NCBI RefSeq assembly: GCF_002113885.1
Contig: NW_018404940.1
Location: 1,983,286 to 2,047,285, forward strand
Reading direction: 5' to 3'
Length of the DNA: 64,000 nucleotides
Source: Mizuhopecten yessoensis
Lineage: Eukaryota
Within the stretch, counting starts at the first letter, position 1, and every line of letters begins with the position of its first letter. Positions 13,079-59,689 of this stretch are shown here, piece by piece. Below the pieces are notes generated by a model. It searched no databases and had not been told where the DNA came from. It saw only the letters and a list, made by a program, of their open reading frames with translations. A program made the position numbers and the translations under genes.

Positions 13079-13609
13079 ATGCTAAGGGCCAAAAAATAGA
13101 AATCTAAATCGGTCAAAACTACTGTTTAAACAGAAATGAAGAGGCGTAATACCTCCTAAATTTTAAATTTCAAAATAAGAGGAATACTGATTTATTTAAT
13201 ACCATTAACGACTGAAATGTCCATATTCACAACATAACAACAGTGTCACTATTCAAGAGAGATAATTGTTGCCATCAAGTTACGGCAAATTTTGGGACTA
13301 AAATATCCACCTGAAAAGTCACCATCGTGTATCTTAAAAGAAGAAAGTAAAGAATATATGTAACTGCACTTTAAATTCGGCAATAGGTGCAGTATGCCGA
13401 AAGTGAATTAAACTGCATCATACAGATGTTACGTCTTTATATATAAGGCTTACAAACTTATACTGCTACCAAAGCTTTGAGTGCATTGGGAGTCTCATCA
13501 AAGGTTTGTTATAGTATAACTGTCTTCGTGAGGGGAATATTCGTTTTGATTTACATCGCAATAAAACGATTGAAATGTTGATTTCTGTATGTAAGGTTGG
13601 CTTACAATT

Positions 13610-13734
13610 TGGTGGAGATAACAATGCCTTGCCACAGCGAAATCTGGTTTGTTCTGCTTAATGGAGCAGCGATTGTTGTTGATTCTGATATTGAGTTTTG
13701 TGCTAGTTTCACCCACGTCCATTTTTGCCTAGCC
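13610..13734 (-). mobile_element. Penelope-like GIY-YIG endonuclease remnant
   Basis: VGETSTKLNIRINNNRCSIKQNKPDFAVARH matches the YVGET..L..R...H......VA.H pattern; it abuts the 5S TRIM. Confidence 0.55.
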
Positions 13735-13738
13735 ATAC

Positions 13739-14169
13739 TGTAACGTGCGGGCGGTCACCCATCCAACTACATGTATTGACCACGCTCGACGTTGCTGAAC
13801 TAGTGAGCGAGTCCCCGGGTCATATCGCATCGCTGGAAAAGCTAGCTAGCCAGTAAGGTAGTATTTCCCCCTCATATACATTATTAGCGGTTACACTCTT
13901 CCCCCCTCTGGGAAGTCTCGTCCTGGGGAATCCCGTAGGTCCTCCCTATGTATCAATGCACCTTCCTTAACCACCGTGAACTGGCCTTACATGATTACAG
14001 AATCCCAACGCTGCCACCAAAAGTAACGTGTGAACGGTCACCCATCAAACTACTGACCACGCTCGACGTTGCTGAACTAGTGAGCGGATCCCGGGGTCAT
14101 ACCGCATCGCTGGAAAAGCTAGATTGCCAGTAAGGCATTATTTCCCTCCCATATACCTTAACTGTAACA
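13739..14169 (-). mobile_element. Non-autonomous LTR retrotransposon (TRIM) with 5S rRNA-derived LTRs
   Basis: Direct repeats 14022-14169 and 13739-13895, the latter TGTAAC...GTTACA. PBS TGGTGGCAGCGTTGGGATTC (14019-14000), PPT AGAGGGGGGAAGAG (13909-13896), TSD ATAC (13735-13738 and 14170-14173). Each LTR has about 55 nt matching the 5S rRNA internal control region. Confidence 0.85.
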
Positions 14170-14774
14170 ATACTCGGACAAAAAAACATGTAGGTGGCTG
14201 CCATAGATCATCGCCCAAACTGGAATGAATAGAAAAGGCGCCCAAGGGAAAGATACTAGAACACCAACCTAAAACCCTCTACCCTCGAGGTATGAACAAA
14301 CGATAAGCTCTTGTTATCCGTTTGTTTCCCTTCGAGGTAGCTAGGTTATTGACAAGATGGTTCACTTTTATTGGTCTGGTGACTCAAACCTGCTGCCAGA
14401 CAGTGTATGAGACTGATTGACGCTGTCGGATTTAGTGGACGAACTATCTGTCTCTCGATGTGTCATTTCGTCAATTACATTTTATTTATACTTGTGCTAC
14501 AGATTTTACTCATTCTAACTAAATTTTGATAATATAATTTATGCAAAAACATATATTTACTATATATTCATTAATCAGAAAGATATTTCAATAATTGTTA
14601 TTCCATATTGCATTTGTCATCTTGGGACGAATCGTGCCATTTTCCCAGCTTTTGCATCTTCACGCTCCAGTTTTTTTCGGTATTTTTAATCTCTTTGTCG
14701 TTGACGCATATACACAGTTTTATAGCTAGGTCAACGATGTGGTCATTGTACATTCTGCCTGCGGCCTACGGTTG

Positions 14775-17700
14775 CAGACCTGTTTACATCTACGATTTTA
14801 GCGTAGTTTCTACGATTATTGAAGTTGAACTACGCTCTACACTTTGGAGAGTAGTTTCTACGCTTTCTACGAAAAAATCCAATAAAATGCCATTGCGTTT
14901 TCGTCATCCTTTGTTGTGTGTTCTGTATCGAATGCAGTCTGTAAATCACATAGTCACTCAGACGCTTATCACAATTTTTATAGGCATTACAAACACCAAA
15001 GTGATCCCGTATTCATCTAATGGTTTATAGACGATAATCGCCGAGGGGTTTCAAATGAATATCCCTCTAATGGTTAATGAAGGTTCCCGATGCGTTCCAA
15101 ATATATATTGGGAAACGACATTTTGACACGAGCAGACGATGCTGAAACGAAAATGCCAAGATGCTCCGCCAAATAATAAGAAGGTGGCGACTCAGCGGTA
15201 CCGATTATCATACACGGAAAATTGGAAATGCCTGCAGCCCTCCAGGAAGGGTGACACGTTCGTTCATTGCACTGTCTGCCGATCAGACTTCTCGTGTAAG
15301 CATGGCGGGAGTTTTGACTGCAAACGACACGTCGATACAAAGATGCACAAGGATTTACATATGTTACACTCTAAAAACGTGTCGATTGCTACTTTCTGTA
15401 AGACGAACACTACTGGTGAAGATCAGCGGACTCGGAATGTAACGAGAGCGGAATTGAAAATGTGCGAACTTATCGCAAATCAGAACATGTCCCTAAGTGT
15501 TGCAGACACCCTTCCTCGGGTATTCCGTACGATGTTTCCGGATTCGAAGATAGCTGCAGGTACGTGCTAGATATTATATTGTTTTATATAAAATTATTAT
15601 GTCAAATTAACAGAGGAACAAAAACGGCGAAAATAACTAAAATTGCGAAGTGTGTCGTACTCGTAGTTGTAGCGTAGTTGTGCCTAAATATAGGTCTACA
15701 TCTGAATCATCACTCAGAAAAACAAAGAGGGATATATGAAGAAGCTACACGTATTTAATACCCATTCAGTAAATTCAATGAATAAAAAGATATCACATTT
15801 GTAAAAAAAAAGAAACCAACTTGACCTAACCATTATTCTTGATCAAAGGGAGATAAATCGTTTTAAAAACTCTGGATTAACTCCTACAAATATGTAAGTT
15901 TTTTTTAATGATTTATTATATTTTTTTGTAAATAATCAAGTTTTGTTTGTGAATATATATTGTTTATAAGTAAGTTCATTGTTGACATAGTTTTATAATA
16001 ATTTACATTGAAGTTTATTTTAAAATAAGGTAATGGTCCTAATTGGTGAATTAAAACTGAATTAACATGTTATTAATTACTTATTTGTTGACAGACATGA
16101 AATGTGCCCGCAACAAAACAACTGTCTTGATTAAGGAGATTGCTACCTTACAACAAGGATCCCTAGCAGAGAGAATGAAAATGCGGCCATTCACCATATC
16201 GACTGATGGATCTAATGATGAAAAAAGCAAGCAGTACCCAATAGTAGTCAGGACATTGGACACAAAAACTGGAACTGTAAATTCGGAACTGTTGTCAATA
16301 CCAATTTGTAAAGGTTCAGCAACAGGTATGTTCAAAATAAACTATGGATTTAATATGTTTTATGCTTCAGTATATTAATTAGTATAACATAAATTATAAT
16401 TCAGACTAGTATTGTATTAATTAGTCGAGTCATGACATACCAGCCAACGATTTAAGAAAATTTTACATTTCACAAATTGAAGATTTGAAATTGTGTTTGG
16501 AGAATATTCTTGTTTTATGTTTAGACATTTCAAATTATATTGGAAGAGTTTTCTAACTTTTCTTATATTACAATGATTTTATTTGCCATTTTATCAAAAT
16601 ATGAAATGTAATTAAATTTAACGGGTTTTAGGAGAGGCCATATTCAACATGATGGATACCGCTTTACAGGAGAGGGGCATTCCGTGGTCGCAATGTATGG
16701 CTCTTGGCTGTGACAACGCAAATGTGATGACTGGGCACAAGAAGGGAGTCTTCGCATTTGTAAAGCAAAAGCAGCCACACATATTTCTGGCTGGATGTAC
16801 TCTCCATTTAGTCCACATTGCAGCTAAGAAGGCAGCAGCAGCAGCTCTTCCTCCAGTGGATGATATCCTGGTGGATATATATTACTTTTTTCACAAAAGT
16901 GACAAACGCCGCTCAGCATTCAAGGGGACACAGGCACTTTACGACTTGGAACAGAAGAAAATGCTGAAGCATGTCTGTACTAGATGGCTCAGTATTGGAA
17001 GGTAATTAACAATTGATAGCATATTCTTACTAATAATTAGAGCTTGCTTACTGAACATGTACAAAAAACTACATGTTTTTAAAATAAGATATTTACAAAA
17101 TGCATTTTTTTAACAAGTCATCGATGTAGCTTTGTTAGAACATGTACAAACATCACATTTTTTGAATATGATATGAATAATTAAACTTTAAACATCAATA
17201 TTTTTCAATTTATTCTTGATTTTGTAGATGTGTCGATCGGATGCTGCTCAACTGGGATGCACTAAAGGACTTCTTTAAAGAGCAGAAAGATGCAGTGGAG
17301 TTAACAAAGTCAAAGAAAGCAGCAGCTGTAGCAGCAAAGAAGTCCAAGATATCAAGCTGTCCAAAGAATTCTACAGAAGAATCATCAGCGCCTGGATATG
17401 CAGAACAGAAGATTGAGGCCATCTATTCTTTCGTCAGGTCCCCGACCAATCGTCTGTATGTCCTCTTTCTTCAGTACACTATCCATGTGTATGATGACAT
17501 TCTATTAAATCTGCAGTCAGATGAACCAAAAATACACATACTACAACGCTCTCTGCAAAAGCTTCTGAGGAATATTCTGACAAGGTTCATCAAGCCCGCA
17601 GCTATGCTTAGTATAGCTGTTGACAAGGTACAGTACAAGCAGAACTGTAACATCAAACCAAACACCTCACTTGTGATTGGAGAGGAAGCCAAAAACTTCA

Positions 17701-18705
17701 TTGAGAATGCTGAGGTAAATCACCTCCGCTCACGAAAGGTTGAGGAATTCTACAAAAGTGTAGTCCGATACTTTCATGAAGTTTGTGACTACATTTGCAG
17801 CAAGCTGCCATTGAATGATCCTGTCTTGTCAGCTGCACAGGTGGCGGATGTAAACTTACAGACAATTGCAAAGTCATCTGACCTTCGTTTCTTCATTGAA
17901 AGATACTCGTGTATCATTCCTCCAGCAACAACAAAAGACAAACTACTTGAGCAATTCACTTTGTATCAATGTACAAATGTCAGCAGCTGTACCAATGAGC
18001 AAACCAGGATGGACTCAATCTGGTCCATGATTGGGAAAATGCGGGACGAGGAAGGGAAACTTATGTTCTCAGAACTCTCGGTGGTAATGTGTGGCATCCT
18101 AACCATACCACACAGTAGTGCACACTGCGAGAGGGTGTTCTCCTGTGTACGTAAGAACAGAACTGAGCAGCGAGCATGTCTTGGAGATAGTACTCTTGAA
18201 AGTCTCCTGGTAATTAAATCTTCAGGCACCCCTCAGGATTACACGGACAAGGAACTGGACCATATCAGGGGGTCGTACTACAGATCTCTGAAATCTTCAT
18301 AAAATGCTGCTTACAGAATTTACCCAATGTGCTGGGTTGCCAACTTGTGTTACTGGACAGATTTGACCCAAAGTGCTGGGTTGTGTTTGTTTTATAACTT
18401 TTATTTTGCAATAAGATTAAAAAAGAAAGACAAAATCATCTGAAATGGTACCAATTATTTATTTGATGTTGTCACTTAAAATGTACCAGAATTCACCTCA
18501 GAGCACCTAGGAATTCAATTTTTTCCGGGGGAGACCCCCCGTACCCCCCTTGCAGGAGGGGGCTTAGGCGCCCCCTCCCGCACCCTCCCCTGCCTGGCCG
18601 CTTCGCGGCTCGGATGCTGGCGATGCCAGCATGTAAAAACTACACTTACCAAATTCAAACTACACTTTAATTCCTCTTTGACAAACAAATGGGTAAACAG
18701 GTCTG
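14775..18705 (+). mobile_element. Complete hAT-superfamily DNA transposon (3931 bp)
   Basis: Perfect 13-bp TIRs CAGACCTGTTTAC (14775-14787 and 18693-18705). Direct flanking repeat CGGTTG (14769-14774 and 18706-18711). Clustered CTACG/CTACAC subterminal motifs and an internal transposase gene. Confidence 0.92.
15139..18302 (+). CDS. hAT transposase, 4 exons, 698 aa, apparently intact
   Basis: Exons 15139-15559, 16095-16325, 16632-17001 and 17228-18302 join in frame through GT-AG introns (2097 nt). Motifs: BED-type zinc finger (CTVC...HVDTKMH), catalytic STDGS and GCDNA, CTLH, TRW, and C-terminal SAHCERVFS of the hAT dimerisation region. Confidence 0.88.
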
Positions 18706-19547
18706 CGGTTGCCGAGGGGCTTATTGTTTTCAAATACTGATGATAGTTATATTTCTTTTTTGTTTTTGTTTTTGCGTAATGTAATTTAAGTGTTCTGTGT
18801 TTTCACTGTTTCTTAATATACAATGTAGGAACGGATTGCTCCGAAATTTGACAACGTCATTTTGTGTTTACTGTTGGAATTACTTTTTTGCTCTGTATGT
18901 ATTTAGATTCAGTATATATACGAAAACAGTGCAGTGAGGCAGGGATTCTTAACTAACATCAATTTGCTAAGGATTCCATAGACCTTGTTAAGAGGTCTTT
19001 CGCCGGTTATCACAACCGCACCTACGAGCATAGACCTAGACAAATCGCTACTCGCCCTCTGCATGCTCGCACCACTGCCAAAAACGGTGACCTGTTCCTT
19101 GCATGTTTAAAACTTCGATGAATCATTTATCGGAAGCCCGTGTTGAGAAAGAATGTGGCCAATGAATCTTCAAAATTGTAATTTTAACAATAAAGCATAA
19201 TGCAATTTGATTGGGATGGAGGCAGTGTTGTGTAATCTTTGAAACATAGGAAACATATTGATCTGTTGCATCTTATCGCAAAATCGAGAAGAAGCAAAAG
19301 GTTATAATTCATATGTTAAGTTCTTTCCTTATCTGTGTATGTACTGGTTATTGAGCTGTTAATTTAAGAAAATAACGAGAAAAACAAAATTACACCAATT
19401 AACTTAATTGGTATCGAAAATATCCATCAATCTCATTAGTGTGTGTTGTGTTTTCGTTGCCACTGCCCTGGTTCTCACTATGGTGACGTGATATTACTTA
19501 GATTTGACGTGTATTGTTATCCGATCATACAGGGTTTGTCGGTTGTA

Positions 19548-19725
19548 TACACGTACTGACTCATGATAATATCAATACAAGTGTGTCCCATATAGTCAAA
19601 ATAATTCTCCCCGGCTAGGTATTGTGAAACACTACGAGCTCAATTGACGATCTACTCGCAGGACGGCTTACCTTTCGTTCTATTTAATGACCTTCAGTAC
19701 GCGTGTTGTTAATCCAATAGATTGC
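19548..19725 (-). promoter_or_regulatory. CYP upstream/5'UTR-homologous block with no downstream coding exon
   Basis: Aligns with the region upstream of the CYP ATGs at 34340-34545 and 51390-51575 (gcaggacggcttacctttcgttctatt-aatgaccttcagtacg). 20020-20130 also matches 45815-45940. Confidence 0.65.
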
Positions 19726-19830
19726 TGAACACTAAACCTGTATTTCTTTATGTGACTAAATGTTAATCTATCTTTGGGAACTTGTAAATATAATAAGAAG
19801 AGAAGAAATGTTAAGGTAGTTTGTTTTTCA

Positions 19831-19913
19831 CCCTTTCACCACTGTAGACCATAATGGACTCATTCATATCAATGCATGGTAGAGTCTACTAAAGTTACAT
19901 AGGGGTGAAATGG
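19831..19913. mobile_element. Small piggyBac-like MITE
   Basis: TIRs CCCTTTCACCACT and CCATTTCACCCCT (11/13 match), flanked by TTCA and TTAA. Confidence 0.5.
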
Positions 19914-20526
19914 TTAACCTCTTCAGTATGTTAGCGTACGGAGCGAATGAAAGTCTAACACGATCAATATTGATAGTAGTTGCGTGCCCATAACGTGTGA
20001 CGTTTCCCCAGTACACAGAGGTAGAATGTCAGCAAATAGAACGACACATAAATACGACTTTGTCATTCTTCACGTTGAAAGAGGAACACTTTGCACTTAA
20101 TGTTGACCTATATAGGACGTCATTTATGAAATTTCTATTGCTCGCTTCTTCGTTTACAAAATATAACGACATAATTTTGTATGTAGACGAATCGTGAAGT
20201 TCTTCAAAAGATGCAGAAAGACATGAAATTGCCTTTCCTCGTACATATTTCTATACGCGATGGAAAAACTTTATTATCATTTATTATCTTTCTTACTTGG
20301 GCGAAATCGAAATCGAATGAAGTCTTCATTGTTTGTATAATTGCAGCCAAAGTATTCCAGTCGTATGGATTTATACGTCTCTCGTCTATTATTTATTCAT
20401 CAAAGGGAAAAGTATGTATATTTCAATGAACAAGGAAAGACCGGGTCGTATGGATTTAGTTATTATGAAAGTACTAAATACTACAGCGGCGGATTCAAGG
20501 GCAGAGCATACAGTACCAATGACCCC

Positions 20527-45365: not shown

Positions 45366-47122
45366 GTTGGTTAGCCTCAGACGATGTTAACATCTCTTTC
45401 CCACTACGTGATGTGAAGTCTGGCTTACTGTCCTGTATATATAGGCAAAGTCTATCAACCCTTTTGAGATTAACAAAAATGATACCACATATCCAGTCTG
45501 CTTGCATGACGTCTTACATATCGTGCTATTAAATGAACTTCAATACGTGTGTCATTTATCCAGGGTAGATTGGTTTTGATACAGCTAAGGTCAGTTAAGG
45601 GCGGGTTTCATGTGTGTTGTGTAAGCGTGCATGCTTGTATGTGTGTTATATCCTGCGTATATGCTTGTATCTGAATGTCTTATTGTGGATAAAGGTTAAC
45701 GTATCCTTGTTAATATAATTTAAAAGAAATGAAAGTTTCAGGTATTTTATTAATCGTTTATTAAGCTATAAAATACGATGTAAACAACCAAGCTTCTCCT
45801 CAAGTACAAAAATTAGAAGGTCAATAAATAGAACGACATATATTATGACGTTGGCATTCTATACGTTGATATATAAATAGGTAAAATGTGTACTTAATAT
45901 TGACCTTTTGGTGCAATGTACAGGTCCCTAGATAGGACGTAAGTTGGGATTTATTTTGTGCTAGCAGTTTGTTTTAACGATATATTTGTTGGGCAAACAT
46001 GATGAGCTTCAAATGATGCAGAATTACCTAGAAACTGTCTTATTTTCTTGGTAAATATGTTCTTGCTATTGCAACTTTCTTACTAGTTCGATATTCAATA
46101 GTATATTTGGTATTATTTTAGCCAACGTTTTGTTTATAAAAACAAACGTATGTTGTTCTCAGTAAATACGATAGGATCCGGTCGGAAGGAATATTGAAAT
46201 AAGAGTGAAATATTATAGTGCTACTCATGAAAAATATCAAAATATTAGCCACACTCGTGAAATATATTTGTTATTGCTGCGAACTCGTGAAAAAAAATCA
46301 AAAATATTAGGCACACTCGTGAAATATATTTGTTATAACTGAAGACACCATTAAATTTTCTATTAATTACATTTTTAGAGCATAAAACATGAAAAATGTA
46401 ATATATTAAAAAAGGCGGAAATTAGAAGCATAATGATAAGTGCCATATTTTAATGACGTCACGCTTGACAACACGGCTGCGAGCCATTTTGCATGGGATA
46501 CTCTTATTTTCTGGTATGATTGCTTATAGAAATGTTATTAATTGTATATTTATAGAAATACTTAATTAAGTGTGTGTACCAAATATTTACCGTTACAACC
46601 ACTTATTCTAACGTCGCTTCATTTGAATCTGGACAAAAATCGTTGCCTTTGAATGCAGCGAATAGAAGATACCGTAATGATTGGTCAATACAAAAAAGTG
46701 ATATATTCACACCCTGAAAATATCACTTTTCGTAAAATATAACAAATTATTAATTTGATAGAATCCGATATTTCACTGGAAAAAATGTAATAAATAAAGT
46801 TATTTACAATTTCGAAATAAGAGATGATAAACATAGCTTAAATAGCACAGCAACACAGACAAAATCGAATAGAAGAAACTAGATACCTTGTTGAGGGAAG
46901 AGATACAAACCAGAAAAAAATACCATGAAGAATAAAACAATATAAGAATGGAGATAAAATTCATAATTAATCTAATTTTAGTAAAAAAAATAGTAAGCTC
47001 GTCTGTAAAATAAGGGGTCATAAAGTATGTCGATTCAAAAATATATGCACAGAAATGTACATCATCCCTTCCACGTAAATATGTCACAGTCAACAGGTCA
47101 ATAATTAGAACGACAGATAGTT

Positions 47123-50100
47123 AACGATTATGTACTGAAATTCGAAATGATGTCCATAGCCTGTGGTACTGTTGATGCCGTTTTGCATGTGGATACATTA
47201 GAAGATGCCCAGTTGTGGTATAGGTATGAAAAAGTGGTATAAGACCTATACAATATGCCGTGGCCTGTTGAAAACGAAAAAAAACCGATTATGTACTGAA
47301 ATTCGAAATGATTCCCATAGCCTGTGGTATTGTTGATGCCGTTTTGCATGTGGATACCTTAGAAGATGCCCAGTTGCGGTATAGGTGTGAAAAAGTGGCA
47401 TAAGACCTATACGATATGCCGTGGCCTGTTGAAAACGAAAAAAATAACGATTATGTACTGAAATTTGAAATGATGCCCAGTGTAGCCTGGGGTATCATTG
47501 ATGCCGTTTTGCATGTGGATACTTTAGAAGATGCCCAGTTTGGGAATAGGTGTGAAAAAGCCGAATAAGACCTATAACAAAATGCCGTGGCCTGTTGAAA
47601 ACGAAAAAATAACGATTATGTACTGAAATTGGAAATTATGCCCAGTGGGCATCTTTAGCCTAGGGTATCGTTGATGCCGTTTGCATGTGGATACCTCAGA
47701 AGATGCCCAGCTATGGTATAGGTGTGCACGAGTAGCATAAGACCTATACCATATGCCGTGGCCTGTTGAAAACGAAAAAATAACGATTATGTACTGAAAT
47801 TCGAAATGATGCCCATAGCCTGGGGTATCGTTGATGCCGTTTTACATGTGGATACCTTAGAAGATGCCCAATTGTGGTATAGGTGTGAAAAAACGGCATA
47901 AGACCTATACAATATGCCGTGGCCTGTTGAAAACTAAAAAATAACGATTATGTACTGAAATTCGAAATGATGCCCATAGCCTGTGGAATTGTTGATGCCG
48001 TTTTGCATGTGGATACCTTAGAAGATGCCCAGTTGTGGTATAGGTGTGAAAAAGCGGCAGAAGACCTATACAATATGCCGTGGCCTGTTGAAAACGAAAA
48101 AATAACGATTATGTACTGAAATTCGAAATGATGCCCATAGCCTGGGTTATCGTTGAGGCCGTTTTATATGTGGATACCTTCGAAGATGCCCAATTGTGGT
48201 ATTGGTGTGAAAAAGCGGCATAAGACCTATACAATATGCCGTGGCCTGTTGAAAACGAAAAAATAACGATTATGTACTGAAATTCGAAATGATGCCCATA
48301 GCCTGGGTTATCGTTGATGCCGTTTTACATGTGGATACCTTAGAAGATGCCGTGTTGTGGTATAGGTGGCGTAAGACCTATACAATATGCCGTGGCCTGT
48401 TGAAAATGGAAAAAAAACACGATTATGTACTGAAATTCAAATAGATGCCCCATGGGCATCTTTAGCCTGAATTATCGTTGATGCCGTTTTTCATGTAGAT
48501 ACCTTAGAAGATGCCGTGTTGTGGTATAGGTCTGAAAAAGCGGCATAAGACCTATAAAAATATGCCGTGGCCTGTTGAAAACGAAAAATTAACGATTATG
48601 TACTGAAATTCGAAATGATGTTCAGTGGGCATCTTAAGCCTGGGTTATCGTTGATGCCGTTTTGCATGTGGATACCTTTGAAGATGCCCAGTTGTGGTAT
48701 AGATGTGAAAAAGTGGCATAAAACCTATACAATATGCCATGGCCTGTTGAAAACGAAAAAATAACGATTATGTACTGAAATTCGAAATGATGCCCAATGG
48801 GCATCTTTAGCCTAGGGTATCGTTGATGCCGTTTGCATGTGGATAACTCAGAAGATGCCCAGTTGTGGTATATGTGTGCACGAGTAGCGTAAGACATATA
48901 CCATATGCCGTGGCCTGTTGAAAACGAAAAAATAAGGATTATGTACTGAAATTCGAAATGATGCCCATAGCCTGGGGTATCGTTGATGCCGTTTTACATG
49001 TGGATACCTTAGAAGATGCCCAGTTGTGGTATAGGTGTGAAAAAGCGGCATAAGACCTATACAATATGCCGTGGCCTGTTGAAAACTAAAAAATAACGAT
49101 TATGTACTGAAATACGAAATGATGCCCATAGCCTGGGGAATTGTTGATGCCGTTTTGCATGTGGATATCTTAGAAGATGCACAGTTGTGGTACAGGTGTG
49201 AAAAAGCGGCACAAGATCTATACAATATGCCGTGGCCTGTTGAAAACGAAAAAAATAACGAGGATGTACTGAAATTCGAAATGATGCCCATAGCCTGGGG
49301 TATTGTTGATGCCGTTTTGCATGTGGATGACTTAGAAGATGCCCACTTGTTGTATATGTGTGAAAAAGCGGCAGAAGACCTATACAATATGCCGTGGACT
49401 GTTGAAAACGAAATGATAACGATTATGTACTGAAATTCGAAATTATGCCCATAGCCTGGGGTATCGTTGATGCCGTTTTACATGTGGATACCTTAGAAGA
49501 TGCCCAGTTGTGGTATAGGTGGCGTAAGACCTATACAATATGCCGTGGCCTGTTTAAAACGAAAAAAACACGATTATGTACTGAAATTCAAATAGATGCC
49601 CAATGGGCATCTTTAGCCTGGGTTATCGTTGATGCCGTTTTTCATGTAGATACCTTAGAAGATGCCCAGTTGTGGTATAGGTCTGAAGAAGCGGCATAAG
49701 ACCTATAAAAATATGCAGTGGCATGTTGAAAACAAAAAAAATAACGATTATGTACTGAAATTCGAAATGATGTTCAGTGGGCATCGTTAGCCTGGGGTAT
49801 CGTTGATGCCGTTTTACATATGGATACCTTAGAAGATGCCTAGTTGTGGTATAGGTGTGTAAAAGCGGCATAAGACCTATAACTATATGCAGTGGCATGT
49901 TGAAAACAAAAAAAATAACGATTATGTACTGAAATTCGAAATGATGTCCAGTGGGCATCGTTAGCCTGGGGTATCGTTGATCCCGTTTTGCATGTGGATA
50001 CCTTAGAAGATGCCCAGTTATGGTATAGGTGTGAAAAAGCGGCATAAGACCTATTACAATATACAGTGGCCTGTTGAAAGCGAAAAAATAAGGATTATGT

Positions 50101-50380
50101 ACTGAAATTCGAAATGATGCCCATAGCCTGGGTTATCGTTGATGCCGTTTTAAATGTGGATACCTTAGAAGATGCCGTGTTGTGGTATAGGTGGCGTTAG
50201 ACCTATACAATATGCCGTGGCCTGTTGAAAACGAAAAAAACACGATTATGTACTGAAATTCGAAATGATGCCAAGTGGGCATCTTTATCCTGGGGTATCG
50301 TTGATGCCGATTTGCATGTGGATACCTTAGTAGATGCCCAGTTGTGGTATAGGTGTGAAAAAGCTGCATAAGAACTATAA
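47123..50380. repeat. ~161-bp satellite, about 20 monomers
   Basis: Monomer anchor CGATTATGTACTGAAATT at 47125, 47286, 47448, 47613, 47784, 47945, 48106, 48267 and onward, with +10/-10 nt variants. Confidence 0.95.
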
Positions 50381-54535: not shown

Positions 54536-54874
54536 TATATAGTATATTATGGCTGTATTATTCTCTATAGTCTAGAGGATAACAGCATGACCAGACAATA
54601 AAAGCATTCTTTAGAAGGTAACACTGGGGTTCTGGAAGGTACCCATTATATAACTGTTTCCTTCGTTTGAAAACTACCTCTGATATCGACACATCTTTTT
54701 CTGTACCAACTTTATTACGCCGTACACGTGTATGGCAACTCTGAAAGTATGAGGTGTATTTGTTCTAATTTGAATTGTCCCCTTCGACGTGTTTTCATTG
54801 CGTAAATATTAAGGTTTTGTACAAATATATACATTCCTTTATTTTGATGTTCATAAAAATGCATAAACAAATAT

Positions 54875-55420
54875 AGAAAGTAGATGGATACATTATACTG
54901 GATATAGAAAGAGATGGATAAAATCTATTGGATATAGAAAGGATATGGATACAAACCATTGGATATAGAAGGGAGATGGATACATTATATTGGATATGGA
55001 AAGGAGATGGTATATACTATTGGATATAAAGGGAGATGGATATATACTATTGGATACAGAAAGGAAATGGATACAAACCATTGGATATAGAAGGGATATG
55101 GATACATTATATTGGATATGGAAAGGAGATTGTATATACTATTGGATACAGAAAGGAAATGGATACAAACCATTGGATATAGAAGGGATATGGATACATT
55201 ATATTGAATATGGAACGGTGATGGCATATACTATTGGATATAAAGGGAGATGGATATATACTATTGGATACAGAAAGGAGATGGAAACATTCTACTGGAT
55301 GAAGAAAAGAGTGAATATATTATGTAGGTTCTAGAATATAGATTGATACATTATGTAGGATATAACAGAGATATAGATGCATTCTCTAGGATATAGAAAA
55401 GAGACGGATTCATTCTCTGG
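54875..55420. repeat. Degenerate ~30-bp purine-rich tandem repeat flanking the 30-bp satellite
   Basis: Units such as GGATATAGAAAGGAGATGGATACATTATATT, 30-31 nt long. Confidence 0.85.
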
Positions 55421-58400
55421 GATATCGTATAGAGATTAATATATTCTTTAGATATCGTATAGAGATTGATATATTCTTTTGATATCGTATAGAGATTGAT
55501 ATATTCTTTAGATATCGTATAGAGATTGATATATTCTTTTGATATCATATAGAGATTGATATATTCTTTTGATATCGTAAAGAGATTGATATATTCTTTT
55601 GATATCGTATAGAGATTGATATATTCTTTAGATATCGTATAGAGATTGATATATTCTTTTGATATCATATAGAGATTGATATATTCTTTGGATATCGTGC
55701 AGAGATTGATATATTATTTGGATATCGTACAGAGATTGATATATTCTTTGGATATCGTATAGAGATTGATGTATTCTTTAGATATCGTATAGAGATTGAT
55801 ATGTTCTTTGGATATCGTATAGAGATTGATATATTCTTTAGATATTGTATAGAGATTGATATATTCTTTGGAGATCGTATAGAGATTAATATATTCTTTA
55901 GATATCGTATAGAGATTGATGTATTCTTTGGATATCGTATAGAGATTGATATATTCTTTAGATATTGTATAGAGATTGATATATTCTTTTGATATCGTAT
56001 AGAGATTGATATATTCTTTTGATATCGTATAGAGATTGATATATTCTTTAGATATTGTATAGAGATTGATATATTCTTTGGATATCGTATAGAGATTGAT
56101 GTATTCTTTAGATATCATATAGAGATTGATATATTCTTTAGATATCGTACAGAGATTGATATATTCTTTGGATATTGTATAGAGATTGATATATTCTTTA
56201 GATATCATATAGAGATTGATATATTGTTTAGATATCGTATAGAGATTGATATATTCTTTAGATATTGTATAGAGATTGATATATTCTTTGGAGATCGTAT
56301 AGAGATTAATATATTCTTTAGATATCGTATAGAGATTGATGTATTCTTTGGATATCGTATAGAGATTGATATATTCTTTAGATATTGTATAGAGATTGAT
56401 ATATTGTTTAGATATCGTATAGAGATTGATATATTCTTTGGATATCGACTAGAGATTAATATATTCTTTAGATATCGTATAGAGATTGATATATTCTTTA
56501 GATATTGTATAGAGATTGATATATTCTTTAGATATCGTATAGAGATTGATGTATTCTTTAGATATCGTATAGAGATTGATATATTCTTTAGATATTGTAT
56601 AGAGATTGATATATTCTTTTGATATCGTATAGAGATTGATATATTCTTTGGATATCGACTAGAGATTAATATATTCTTTAGATATCGTATAGAGATTGAT
56701 GTATTCTTTAGATATTGTATAGAGATTGATATATTCTTTAGATATCGTATAGAGATTGATATGTTCTTTGGATATCGTATAGAGATTGATATATTCTTTA
56801 GATATTGTATAGAGATTGATGTATTCTTTAGATATTTATAGAGATTGATATATTGTTTAGATATCGTATAGAGATTGATATATTCTTTAGATATTGTATA
56901 GAGATTGATATATTCTTTGGATATCGACTAGAGATTAATATATTCTTTAGATATCGTATAGAGATTGATGTATTCTTTAGATATTGTATAGAGATTGATA
57001 TATTCTTTTGATATCGTATAGAGATTGATATATTCTTTTGATATCATATAGAGATTGATATATTCTTTTGATATCGTAAAGAGATTGATATATTCTTTTG
57101 ATATCGTATAGAGATTGATATATTCTTTAGATATTGTATAGAGATTGATATATTCTTTGGAGATCGTATAGAGATTAATATATTCTTTAGATATCGTATA
57201 GAGATTGATGTATTCTTTAGATATCGTATAGAGATTGATATATTCTTTAGATATCGTACAGAGATTGATATATTCTTTAGATATCGTACAGAGATTGATA
57301 TATTCTTTGGATATCGTATAGAGATTGATGTATTCTTTAGATATTGTATAGAGATTGATATATTCTTTGGATATCGACTAGAGATTAATATATTCTTTAG
57401 ATATCGTATAGAGATTGATGTATTCTTTAGATATTGTATAGAGATTGATATATTCTTTGGATATCGTATAGAGATTGATGTATTCTTTAGATATTGTATA
57501 GAGATTGATATATTCTTTGGATATCGACTAGAGATTAATATATTCTTTAGATATCGTATAGAGATTGATATGTTCTTTGGATATTGTATAGAGATTGATA
57601 TATTCTTTAGATATCGTATAGAGATTGATGTATTCTTTAGATATCATATAGAGATTGATATATTGTTTAGATATCGTATAGAGATTGATATAATCTTTGG
57701 ATATCGTACAGAGATTGATATATTCTTTGGATATCGTATAGAGATTAATATATTCTTTAGATATCGTATAGAGATTGATATATTCTTTAGATATCATATA
57801 GAGATTGATATATTCTTTAGATATCGTATAGAGATTGATGTATTCTTTAGATATTGTATAGAGATTGATATATTCTTTTGATATCGTATAGAGATTGATA
57901 TATTCTTTAGATATTGTATAGAGATTGATATATTGTTTAGATATCGTATAGAGATTGATATATTCTTTGGATATCGACTAGAGATTAATATATTCTTTAG
58001 ATATCGTATAGAGATTGATGTATTCTTTAGATATTGTATAGAGATTGATATATTCTTTAGATATCATATAGAGATTGATATATTCTTTAGATATCGTATA
58101 GAGATTGATGTATTCTTTAGATATCATATAGAGATTGATATATTCTTTAGATATCGTACAGAGATTGATATATTCTTTGGATATCGTGTAGGGATTGATA
58201 TATTCTTTGGATATCGTACAGAGATTGATATATTCTTTGGATATCGTATAGAGATTGATATATTCTTTAGATATCGTACAGAGATTGATATATTCTTTGG
58301 ATATTTTATAGAGATTGATATATTCTTTAGATATCGTATAGAGATTGATATGTTCTTTGGATATCGTATAGAGATTGATATATTCTTTGGATATCGTATA

Positions 58401-59432
58401 GAGATTAATATATTCTTTAGATATCGTATAGAGATTGATGTATTCTTTGGATATCGTATAGAGATTGATATATTCTTTAGATATCGTACAGAGATTGATA
58501 TATTCTATAGATATCGTACAGAGATTGATATATTCTTTGGATATCGTATAGAGATTGATGTATTCTTTAGATATCGTATAGAGATTGATATATTCTTTAG
58601 ATATCTTATAGAGATTGATATATTCTTTGGATATCGTATAGAGATTGATGTATTCTTTAGATATCGTATAGAGATTGATATATTCTTTAGATATCGTATA
58701 GAGATTGATATGTTCTTTGGATATCGTATAGAGATTAATATATTCTTTAGATATCGTATAGAGATTGATATTTTCTTTAGATATCGTACAGAGATTGATA
58801 TATTCTTTAGATATCGTACAGAGATTGATATATTCTTTGGATATCGTATAGAGATTGATATATTTTTTGGATATCGTATAGAGATTGATATATTCTTTAG
58901 ATATCGTATAGAGATTGATGTATTCTTTAGATATTGTATAGAGATTGATATATTGTTTAGATATCGTATAGAGATTGATATATTCTTTGGATATCGTATA
59001 GAGATTGATATTTTCTTTGGATATCGTACAGAGATTGATATATTCTTTGGATATCGTACAGAGATTGATATATCCTTTGGATATCGTACAGAGATTGATA
59101 TATTCTTTGGATATTTTATAGAGATTGATATATTCTTTAGATATCGTATAGAGATTGATATATTCTTTAGATATCTTATAGAGATTGATATATTCTTTGG
59201 ATATCGTATAGAGATTGATGTATTCTTTAGATATTGTATAGAGATTGATATATTCTTTAGATATCGTACAGAGATTGATATATTCTTTGGATATCGTATA
59301 GAGATTGATATATTTTTTGGATATCGTATAGAGATTGATATATTTTTTGGATATCGTATAGAGATTGATATATTCTTTGGATATCGTATAGAGATTGATA
59401 TATTTTTTGGATATCGTATAGAGATTGATACA
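55421..59432. repeat. 30-bp tandem satellite, ~133 copies
   Basis: Unit GATATCGTATAGAGATTGATATATTCTTT(A/G/T), with a single 1-nt phase slip near 56836. Confidence 0.97.
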
Positions 59433-59689
59433 TTTAAAACCTCTATTTCTGCGAGTTTTGGAAAAGAACAGACCGAACTACTAAGTGCCACTGCATGTTA
59501 TAGCATTAATCGACTAATGTGAAGTCAATTCAAATCTTGCGAATTTCTTTAGTGTCTTCTTCTTATGAGACATTGGATAAACCAAAACTTATCTGCTGCT
59601 ATCATCGCGCCTCTTGCGACCCCATTTTTTCTTCCTACCTTACTTACTCTTCTAACAGTATCACCGTGCGCACCCGTCTTCATATGACA

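What the first reader, a model, noticed from the sequence alone, without database searches (positions are those of the whole stretch)
14769..18711. Intact, intron-containing hAT transposon with a 6-bp rather than 8-bp target duplication
Seen: perfect 13-bp TIRs, a four-exon uninterrupted 698-aa transposase with BED finger, DDE, CxxH and RW motifs, and flanks CGGTTG/CGGTTG that cannot be extended to 8 bp. Known: canonical hAT elements make 8-bp TSDs, while minor lineages with 5-7 bp exist (hAT5, hAT6, hATw). Inference: a recent, possibly active member of a rare hAT lineage and a candidate transgenesis tool for this host group.
Basis: partly seen in the sequence, partly recalled or inferred. Interest (0 to 1): 0.7.

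Follow-up and report, generated by a model that had tools for sequence, protein, structure and literature searches.

The report
Intact scallop hAT transposon, 6-bp duplication
This is a real, complete cut-and-paste jumping gene of the hAT type in the Yesso scallop that duplicates 6 rather than the usual 8 host bases when it inserts; that behaviour has been known since 2007 as the hAT6 group, so this is a well-preserved new family, not a new mechanism.

Summary
Window 14775-18705 is a 3,931-bp element with perfect 13-bp inverted ends (CAGACCTGTTTAC) and a CGGTTG duplication on each side.

**The 6-bp duplication is real.**
- Five paralogous uninterrupted copies of the old host repeat carry one 6-nt block at the insertion point.
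- A second copy (contig C133, 99.4% identical) has GATTTC/GATTTC.
- A diverged sister family (C5537, about 50% protein identity, same ends) has CGATGT/CGATGT.
- An 8-bp duplication is excluded in all three.

**The gene model is right.** The four exons give 698 aa, identical to RefSeq XP_021348223.1 (Mizuhopecten yessoensis LOC110447097, "uncharacterized").

**It is a hAT transposase.**
- It passes Pfam Dimer_Tnp_hAT.
- Its predicted fold matches only Hermes transposase strongly.
- D178, D245, E642, CxxH and RW are invariant or nearly invariant (C273) in 30 homologues.
- Pfam does not call the N-terminal finger BED; it is a conserved CCHH finger.

**Recency and activity.** The C133 copy carries E642K at the catalytic glutamate. 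The window copy is therefore the only copy of its own family found with a complete catalytic triad. RNA-like contigs show introns 2 and 3 spliced. Copy number is low. Current mobility is plausible but untested.

**Verdict:** new member of the known hAT6 kind.

The parts
14769..14774 (.). Left copy of the 6-bp target site duplication, CGGTTG
   Evidence: Five paralogous empty sites show a single 6-nt block here.
14775..14787 (+). 5' terminal inverted repeat, CAGACCTGTTTAC
   Evidence: The same 13-mer ends the C133 and C5537 elements.
14788..14875 (+). 5' subterminal repeats: five CTACG motifs at element positions 16, 36, 56, 84 and 93, plus GTAGTTT motifs. These are presumed transposase-binding sites.
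   Evidence: 0 of 20,000 shuffles reach five CTACG in the first 130 bp. The binding function is inferred.
15139..15559 (+). Exon 1 (aa 1-140 plus the first base of codon 141). It holds the CCHH zinc finger (C44, C47, H64, H70).
   Evidence: The last 40 aa are collinear with homologue P0023.
15560..16094 (+). Intron 1 (535 nt, GT..AG)
   Evidence: The RefSeq model and homologue collinearity support it. It was not seen spliced in the contigs laid.
16095..16325 (+). Exon 2, with the first catalytic aspartate D178 (STDGSND)
16326..16631 (+). Intron 2 (306 nt, GT..AG)
   Evidence: An X6 contig skips exactly 306 nt, with 232 letters on the shorter side.
16632..17001 (+). Exon 3, with the second aspartate D245 (GCDNANV), CxxH (C273-H276) and R335 W336
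17002..17227 (+). Intron 3 (226 nt, GT..AG)
   Evidence: An X5 contig skips 226 nt but has only 25 letters on one side. An X6 contig from a divergent copy skips the same interval.
17228..18302 (+). Exon 4 with the stop codon. It holds the all-helical insertion region, the hAT dimerisation domain (aa 621-672) and the catalytic E642 (codon GAG at 18129-18131).
18504..18590 (.). G+C-rich piece of an unrelated dispersed repeat, carried inside the 3' untranslated part
   Evidence: More than 15 other genomic loci match only this stretch at 77-96% identity. Contigs with other flanks show loose ends at 18507 and 18548.
18639..18665 (+). 3' subterminal repeats: ACTACAC twice, which read as GTGTAGT(TT) inward from the end
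18693..18705 (-). 3' terminal inverted repeat, GTAAACAGGTCTG on the + strand
18706..18711 (.). Right copy of the 6-bp target site duplication, CGGTTG

Best explanation
Window 14775-18705 is an autonomous-type hAT DNA transposon of the Yesso scallop.

**What it encodes.** Its four-exon gene (RefSeq LOC110447097) encodes a 698-aa transposase. The protein has an N-terminal CCHH zinc finger, an RNase-H-like DDE core interrupted by a helical insertion domain, and the C-terminal hAT dimerisation region.

**How it moves (inferred from hAT biochemistry).**
- The transposase binds the 13-bp inverted ends and the subterminal CTACG/GTAGTTT repeats.
- It excises the element through hairpins formed on the flanking DNA.
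- It joins the two 3' ends to target phosphates staggered by 6 bp rather than 8 bp.
- Gap repair then leaves a 6-bp duplication.

The 6-bp stagger places it in the known hAT6 type.

**History.** The window copy and a copy on contig C133 arose from very recent transposition. The C133 copy has since lost the catalytic glutamate (E642K). The window copy is therefore the only copy of its own family found in this assembly that could supply active enzyme. It could also mobilise C133 and the few internally deleted derivatives in trans.

**Shown:** structure, TSD length, family membership, recency, and splicing of introns 2 and 3.
**Inferred:** DNA binding sites, cleavage chemistry and present-day activity.
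For: **Ends and duplication**
- TIRs and TSD in the window.
- Five paralogous empty sites have one 6-nt block:.
- The C133 copy has TSD GATTTC/GATTTC.
- The C5537 family (4,474 bp, same TIR) has CGATGT at both ends.
- The MITE-like C4783 (ATGATT) and C4420 (CAGACA) fit 6 bp if one allows a 1-nt indel at a TIR tip.

**Gene model**
- It equals RefSeq XP_021348223.1.
- Homologues are collinear across all three junctions.
- Spliced contigs exist for introns 2 and 3.

**hAT identity**
- Pfam Dimer_Tnp_hAT: 1.3e-7 at 31.8 bits on exon 4 and 2.3e-7 at 31.0 bits on the whole protein, against a cutoff of 21.4 bits.
- A family profile hits Hermes at 4e-13 and aligns D/D/E, CxxH and RW.
- The AlphaFold model has pLDDT 88.9, and its top 10 PDB fold hits are all Hermes (E about 1e-11, probability 1.00).
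- D178, D245, H276, R335, W336 and E642 are invariant in 30 homologues.

**Recency**
- C133 differs from the window copy by 11 substitutions, a 1-bp deletion and an 11-bp insertion.
- There are no differences in the introns or in exons 1-3.

**Literature**
- hAT families with 6-bp TSDs are named hAT6 (PMC12730594, citing Kapitonov & Jurka 2007).
Against: - Copy number is very low. Only 7 5' ends and 14 3' ends are recognisable. The exact TIR 13-mer occurs 81 times against 35 for the control, and many of those hits lie in tandem arrays.
- The deletion derivatives are old (77-88% identity). Two of them (C1125, C483) show no clean TSD.
- Only one copy of this family has the full catalytic triad.
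- No presence/absence polymorphism was tested at this locus.
- Intron 1 was not seen spliced. Contigs run through both its donor and its acceptor.
- The runs with spliced contigs are only guessed to be RNA.
- The exact-copy X5 contig has just 25 letters on one side of the intron 3 joint.
- Raw RNA reads are few: 12 in 12.4 million records. Some are read-through from the C133 flank.
- Clustering with Repbase hAT6 reference transposases could not be tested.
Confidence: 0.9

Rival explanations
1. The element is structurally intact but no longer moves. It would be a young, silenced or already inactive relic whose two copies are fixed in the species.
For: - Copy number is very low.
- One of the two young copies already carries E642K.
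- Expression is low in raw RNA reads.
- No polymorphism was demonstrated at the window locus.
- A contig from another run (X5) spans the right junction of the window copy, so the insertion is present there too.
Against: - The window copy has perfect TIRs and TSD, an open 698-aa frame, and every invariant catalytic residue.
- No substitutions separate the two copies in 1,067 nt of introns.
- Run X6 holds a 5' junction with a flank not found at any 5' end in the reference. It also holds a spliced transcript-like contig from a copy that matches no reference copy compared. This hints at copy differences between individuals.
Confidence: 0.45
2. The gene is a domesticated hAT-derived host gene of the FAM200/ZBED5 type, not a mobile element.
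For: - RefSeq annotates it as an ordinary protein-coding gene.
- Its relatives are named FAM200C-like or ZBED5-like, and the homologues carry the FAM200-ZBED5_RNase-like Pfam domain.
Against: - The gene lies between perfect TIRs with a TSD.
- It occurs at two or more loci with unrelated flanks and different TSDs.
- Truncated and internally deleted copies exist.
- The insertion site is empty in five paralogous repeat copies.
- The catalytic residues are all retained.
Confidence: 0.03
3. The 6-bp flank identity is a coincidence or a boundary error, and the family really makes 8-bp duplications like canonical hAT elements.
For: - In the window copy the inverted repeat can be read as 14 bp (GCAGACC...GGTCTGC), so the boundary might seem uncertain.
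- Two old MITE-like copies lack clean TSDs.
Against: - With 14-bp ends the flanks would share only GGTT.
- Three independent elements have exact 6-bp repeats directly abutting CAG...CTG, and an 8-bp reading is impossible in each.
- The five empty sites fix both the boundary and the length.
Confidence: 0.01

Closest known systems
hAT6 group of hAT transposons (Kapitonov & Jurka, Repbase Reports 2007, as cited in PMC12730594)
   Same: - It encodes a hAT transposase and has short CAG-type TIRs.
- It makes 6-bp target site duplications.
- It is an animal host lineage. PMC12730594 places hAT5 and hAT6 inside an animal lineage that includes Blackjack.
   Different: - Membership by transposase phylogeny could not be tested, because no Repbase sequences were on hand.
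- This is a scallop family with a four-exon gene.
- Its relatives are annotated FAM200C-like or ZBED5-like.
Hermes (housefly hAT; PDB 2bw3, 4d1q, 8edg)
   Same: - The overall fold matches (Foldseek E about 1e-11, TM 0.55-0.63 normalised to Hermes).
- The catalytic D/D/E, CxxH and RW motifs and the C-terminal SxxERxFS block all align.
- Both have an N-terminal zinc finger, short TIRs and subterminal repeats.
   Different: - Sequence identity is only 12-14%.
- Hermes makes 8-bp TSDs with a T at position 2 and an A at position 7 (PMC8721813). This family makes 6-bp TSDs with no evident consensus in five sites.
- Hermes has no introns; this gene has three.
Buster/FAM200/ZBED5-type hAT transposases and their domesticated vertebrate derivatives
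   Same: - Homologues carry Pfam PF27073 (FAM200-ZBED5_RNase-like) together with Dimer_Tnp_hAT.
- A fish ZBED5-like protein is a distant relative at 27-28% identity.
   Different: - This one is a mobile element with TIRs and a TSD, not a domesticated gene.
- Its TSD is 6 bp, whereas Buster-family elements make 8-bp duplications. That last point is from established knowledge and was not tested here.
hAT5 and hAT7 groups
   Same: They are also hAT lineages whose TSD departs from 8 bp: 5 bp for hAT5, and 7 bp for hAT7, named in 2025 in rust fungi.
   Different: The TSD length differs. hAT7 clusters with fungal and plant Ac-like elements, not with animal lineages.

Membership tests
hAT superfamily | C-terminal hAT dimerisation domain (Pfam PF05699) | tested here: met
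   Exon 4 scores 31.8 bits and the whole protein P0134 scores 31.0 bits, against a cutoff of 21.4 bits.
hAT superfamily | RNase-H-like DDE core with a large helical insertion, structurally like Hermes | tested here: met
   The profile search hits Hermes at 4e-13 with D/D/E aligned. The model has pLDDT 88.9, and the top fold hits are all Hermes. D178, D245 and E642 are invariant.
hAT superfamily | CxxH and RW motifs | tested here: met
   C273-x2-H276 and R335 W336. They are aligned to the CSSHLL and TRW motifs of Hermes.
hAT superfamily | Short TIRs (10-25 bp) and subterminal repeats | tested here: met
   Perfect 13-bp TIRs. Five CTACG motifs lie in the first 100 bp. The TIR size range is from PMC3942097.
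hAT superfamily | 8-bp target site duplication (the usual rule, not universal) | tested here: not met
   The TSD is 6 bp in three intact elements and at five empty sites. Recognised hAT subgroups with 5, 6 and 7 bp exist, so this does not exclude membership.
hAT superfamily | N-terminal BED zinc finger | tested here: inconclusive
   Pfam zf-BED does not match at E<=1. A conserved CCHH finger with a predicted beta-beta-alpha shape is present. Atlas neighbours carry zf-C2H2_12, and zf-BED only rarely.
hAT6 group | 6-bp target site duplication | tested here: met
   CGGTTG, GATTTC and CGATGT are perfect. ATGATT and CAGACA fit with a 1-nt indel at a TIR tip. Five empty sites agree.
hAT6 group | Transposase clusters with Repbase hAT6 reference transposases | not testable with these tools
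   No Repbase sequences were available. The library only reports that hAT5 and hAT6 sit in an animal lineage with Blackjack.
Domesticated hAT-derived gene (FAM200/ZBED type) | No TIRs or TSD, single syntenic locus | tested here: not met
   TIRs and TSD are present. There are several loci, truncated and deleted copies, and empty paralogous sites.

The most novel reading that the evidence does not exclude
The window copy may be the single working source of a currently mobile hAT6-type family in the Yesso scallop.

- Insertions would then differ between individuals.
- Its transposase (XP_021348223.1) would be a natural, uncorrected, active enzyme that makes 6-bp staggered target cuts.
- That would give a direct experimental handle on what sets TSD length in hAT transposases. 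The naturally occurring E642K sister copy would serve as a built-in dead control.
- It would also be a first endogenous transposon vector candidate for bivalves.
Probability: 0.35. Interest if true: 0.5.

Novelty: new member of a known kind. Interest (0 to 1): 0.33.

Why it matters
It shows that a RefSeq "uncharacterized protein" gene of a farmed bivalve is the transposase of a structurally perfect hAT element. It also documents, with empty-site proof, a 6-bp-duplicating hAT lineage spread across bivalves, gastropods, a nemertean, a brachiopod and sea urchins.

hAT elements such as Hermes, Tol2 and TcBuster became gene-transfer tools, and molluscs lack such tools. An intact native element is therefore a reasonable candidate to test.

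The pair of copies differs in the protein by one catalytic residue, which makes a natural active/dead control.

None of this changes what is known about hAT mechanism.

Tried and rejected
**Searches that gave little or nothing**
1. Exon-wise Pfam scans found nothing for exons 1-3. The catalytic core was shown instead through homologue alignments and a profile search against Hermes.
The C5537 TSD was tested by a pattern search instead, and that succeeded.
I could not look for TIRs and TSDs around homologues in Littorina, Mytilus, Lineus and others, so the 6-bp rule is shown only within this genome.
4. A degenerate pattern search for the 5' ends of C5510, C5536 and C5556 was at chance level, and the list was cut before those contigs. 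A specific search for C5510 found no 5' end. Both are uninformative.
5. Rfam found nothing in 13500-20000.
6. One literature search on hAT6 in molluscs was swamped by unrelated bivalve papers.

**Readings rejected or corrected**
7. The 50-letter flank of an unknown 5' junction in run X6 belongs to a 354-copy repeat. It cannot be assigned to a locus, so it is only a hint of a non-reference insertion.
8. I tested whether the X6 spliced contig comes from the C2580 copy. Only 4 of 20 variants are shared, so its source copy is not identified.
9. I first read the single exon-4 difference between the two copies as synonymous, because a table rounded identity to 100%. Searches show that it is E642K.

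Exons were searched one by one by reference. Whole-protein analyses used the database protein P0134, which a tool returned.
Full report
**1. What is in the sequence**

The stretch 14775-18705 (3,931 bp) begins with CAGACCTGTTTAC and ends with its exact reverse complement. Directly outside lie CGGTTG (14769-14774) and CGGTTG (18706-18711). The next bases differ, TA on the left and CC on the right, so the repeat is 6 bp and cannot be read as 8 bp. The repeat finder reports 14-bp arms because the last base of the left duplication (G) and the first base of the right one (C) happen to be complementary. With 14-bp ends the flanks would share only GGTT.

**2. Proof of the 6-bp duplication**

Both flanks of the window copy belong to an old dispersed repeat with more than 40 copies at about 70% identity. 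Five of those copies run uninterrupted through the insertion point. When aligned, they show ...ggctta | one 6-nt block (CGCTAG, CGCTTG, CACTAG, GGCAAG) | ccgagggg... The window instead has ...ggccta CGGTTG [element] CGGTTG ccgagggg.... This fixes both the element boundary and the length of the duplication.

Other copies in the same genome agree:

| Copy | Description | Flanking repeat |
|---|---|---|
| C133 | Full-length, 99.4% identical | GATTTC / GATTTC |
| C5537:912868-917341 | 4,474 bp, same 13-bp ends, protein about 50% identical | CGATGT / CGATGT |
| C4783 | Internally deleted | ATGATT, fits with a 1-nt indel at a TIR tip |
| C4420 | Internally deleted | CAGACA, fits with a 1-nt indel at a TIR tip |
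| C1125, C483 | Old deleted copies | No clean duplication |

An 8-bp reading is impossible for each of the three intact elements. The five target sequences show no evident consensus.

**3. The gene**

The exons are 15139-15559, 16095-16325, 16632-17001 and 17228-18302. They add to 2,097 nt, which is 698 codons plus a stop. All three introns are GT..AG, and the three split codons (GAC, GGA, AGA) are sense codons.

I searched the model exon by exon, by reference, and did not assemble the joined protein myself. A profile search then returned RefSeq proteins of Mizuhopecten yessoensis. The four exon translations match residues 1-140, 142-217, 219-340 and 342-698 of the 698-aa protein P0134. That protein is XP_021348223.1 (LOC110447097, 'uncharacterized'), on a 3.36-Mb contig.

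Uninterrupted homologues from other animals are collinear across all three junctions.

Reads and contigs:
- A 1,618-nt contig of run X6 skips exactly intron 2 (306 nt, GT..AG) and intron 3. It comes from a divergent copy with frame-breaking indels.
- A contig of run X5, identical to the window except for one letter, skips intron 3 (226 nt). It has only 25 letters on one side.
- Intron 1 was not seen spliced. Contigs run through its donor and its acceptor.
- These runs are only guessed to be RNA.
- Raw RNA reads of run X21 are few (12). Four of them run from the C133 flank into the 5' end, which indicates read-through transcription.

**4. What the protein is**

Pfam finds only Dimer_Tnp_hAT, above its cutoff. 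A profile of 13 homologues hits Hermes transposase at 4e-13. It aligns STDGSND with the first Hermes aspartate block, GCDNA with the second, CxxH with CSSHLL, TRW with TRW, and HSSAHCERVFS with the SSAASERTFS block of Hermes.

In an alignment of 30 near-full-length homologues, D178, D245, H276, R335, W336 and E642 are invariant. An AlphaFold model built on that alignment has mean pLDDT 88.9 and pTM 0.78. Its only strong fold matches in the PDB are Hermes entries, with E about 1e-11 and probability 1.00.

The homologues carry the newer Pfam family PF27073, FAM200-ZBED5_RNase-like.

The N-terminal 'BED finger' is not recognised by Pfam. A C-x2-C...H-x5-H finger is conserved and is predicted as short strands followed by a helix. 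I call it a BED-like CCHH finger.

The 5' end carries five CTACG motifs within 100 bp (0 of 20,000 shuffles reach this). Both ends carry GTAGTTT-type motifs. This is the usual layout of hAT subterminal binding sites, but the function is inferred.

**5. Family size and age**

The family is small. I found 7 recognisable 5' ends and 14 3' ends. The copies are:
- two full-length copies;
- one copy lacking its first 485 bp (C2580, 97%);
- one 3' fragment (C3160, 95%);
- about seven internally deleted copies at 77-88% identity;
- several more distant 3' ends.

The window and C133 copies differ by 11 substitutions, a 1-bp deletion and an 11-bp insertion. None of these lie in the 1,067 nt of introns or in exons 1-3. 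They therefore arose by very recent transposition; their flanks and duplications are unrelated.

The single coding difference, G to A at window 18129, changes GAG to AAG, which is E642K at the invariant catalytic glutamate. The C133 gene (XP_021346237.1) should therefore encode a dead enzyme. The window copy is the only copy of its own family found in this assembly with the complete triad.

The sister family on C5537 (XP_021376724.1, 705 aa) also keeps D, D and E.

**6. Distribution**

Relatives at 40-56% identity occur in Mytilus, Sinanodonta, Littorina, Batillaria, Biomphalaria, Babylonia, Elysia, Lingula, Lineus and sea urchins. A fish ZBED5-like protein is a distant relative. In a quick maximum-likelihood tree the two scallop families fall in a supported clade with a Mytilus protein. 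That clade sits inside a larger clade that, by its named rows, is spiralian, and sea urchins fall outside it. The tree was rooted on one long-branched row, so deep placements are unsure.

**7. Comparison with what is known**

hAT elements normally make 8-bp duplications (PMC3942097; PMC8721813). Families with 5-bp and 6-bp duplications were named hAT5 and hAT6 in 2007, and hAT7 was added in 2025. hAT5 and hAT6 lie in an animal lineage with Blackjack (PMC12730594).

This element meets the defining trait of hAT6. Clustering with the Repbase references could not be tested here. I therefore file it as a new member of a known kind.

**8. Mechanism**

Shown:
- the anatomy of the element;
- the 6-bp stagger implied by the duplications;
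- the conserved catalytic residues;
- the recent copy-out;
- the splicing of introns 2 and 3.

Inferred from Hermes biochemistry:
- binding to the ends and subterminal repeats;
- excision through hairpins on the flanks, with the CxxH and RW residues;
- strand transfer 6 bp apart, followed by gap repair.

Current activity is plausible but untested.

**9. Limits**

- Only one read-laying run was available.
- Because of these limits, TSDs around homologues in other species, the 5' ends of more distant relatives, and presence/absence among individuals were not examined.

Noticed in passing
G000:C133:89401-93341 (L002); window-equivalent position 18129: The second full-length copy differs from the window copy in the protein by one residue, E642K, at the invariant catalytic glutamate. 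It is annotated as XP_021346237.1 (LOC110445779) and is probably a non-autonomous copy with intact ends.
   Followed up: yes
G000:C5537:912868-917341 (partly in L055 and L020): A sister hAT family of 4,474 bp has the identical 13-bp TIR and a 6-bp TSD (CGATGT). It has an extra intron inside the exon-3 region and an open gene annotated as XP_021376724.1 (705 aa, about 50% identical, DDE retained). Its 5' 486 bp could not be fetched.
   Followed up: partly
window 18504-18590: A G+C-rich piece inside the element's 3' untranslated part matches more than 15 other loci at 77-96% identity and nothing else of the element. It is a fragment of another dispersed repeat carried by the transposon, and its nature is unknown.
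   Followed up: no
window 14375-14774 and 18706-18920: The element is inserted in an old dispersed repeat with more than 40 copies at about 70% identity. Uninterrupted copies of that repeat served as empty sites.
   Followed up: partly
G000:C76737:540958-542570 and G000:C5587:606091-608829: The exact TIR 13-mer CAGACCTGTTTAC recurs on one strand in tandem arrays. Spacing is in multiples of 40 bp on C76737 and irregular on C5587. These may be satellites derived from, or merely sharing, a transposon end. No sequence could be fetched.
   Followed up: no
run X6, laid on window 14774-15043 and 16092-18285: Another individual's run holds a 5' junction whose flank (...TTCAACAACCACTC) is not found at any 5' end in the reference. 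It also holds a spliced contig from a copy that matches no reference copy compared (C2580 was checked by variants, C3160 only by eye against run X1). This hints at copy differences between individuals. The flank is a 354-copy repeat.
   Followed up: partly
window 47122-50379: Satellite array with a 161-bp unit, about 20 copies, 84% matches.
   Followed up: no
window 54871-59434: Minisatellites: a 92-214-bp periodic array at 54871-55414, then a 30-bp unit repeated about 134 times at 55421-59434. They coincide with the low-GC, strongly GC-skewed part of the window.
   Followed up: no
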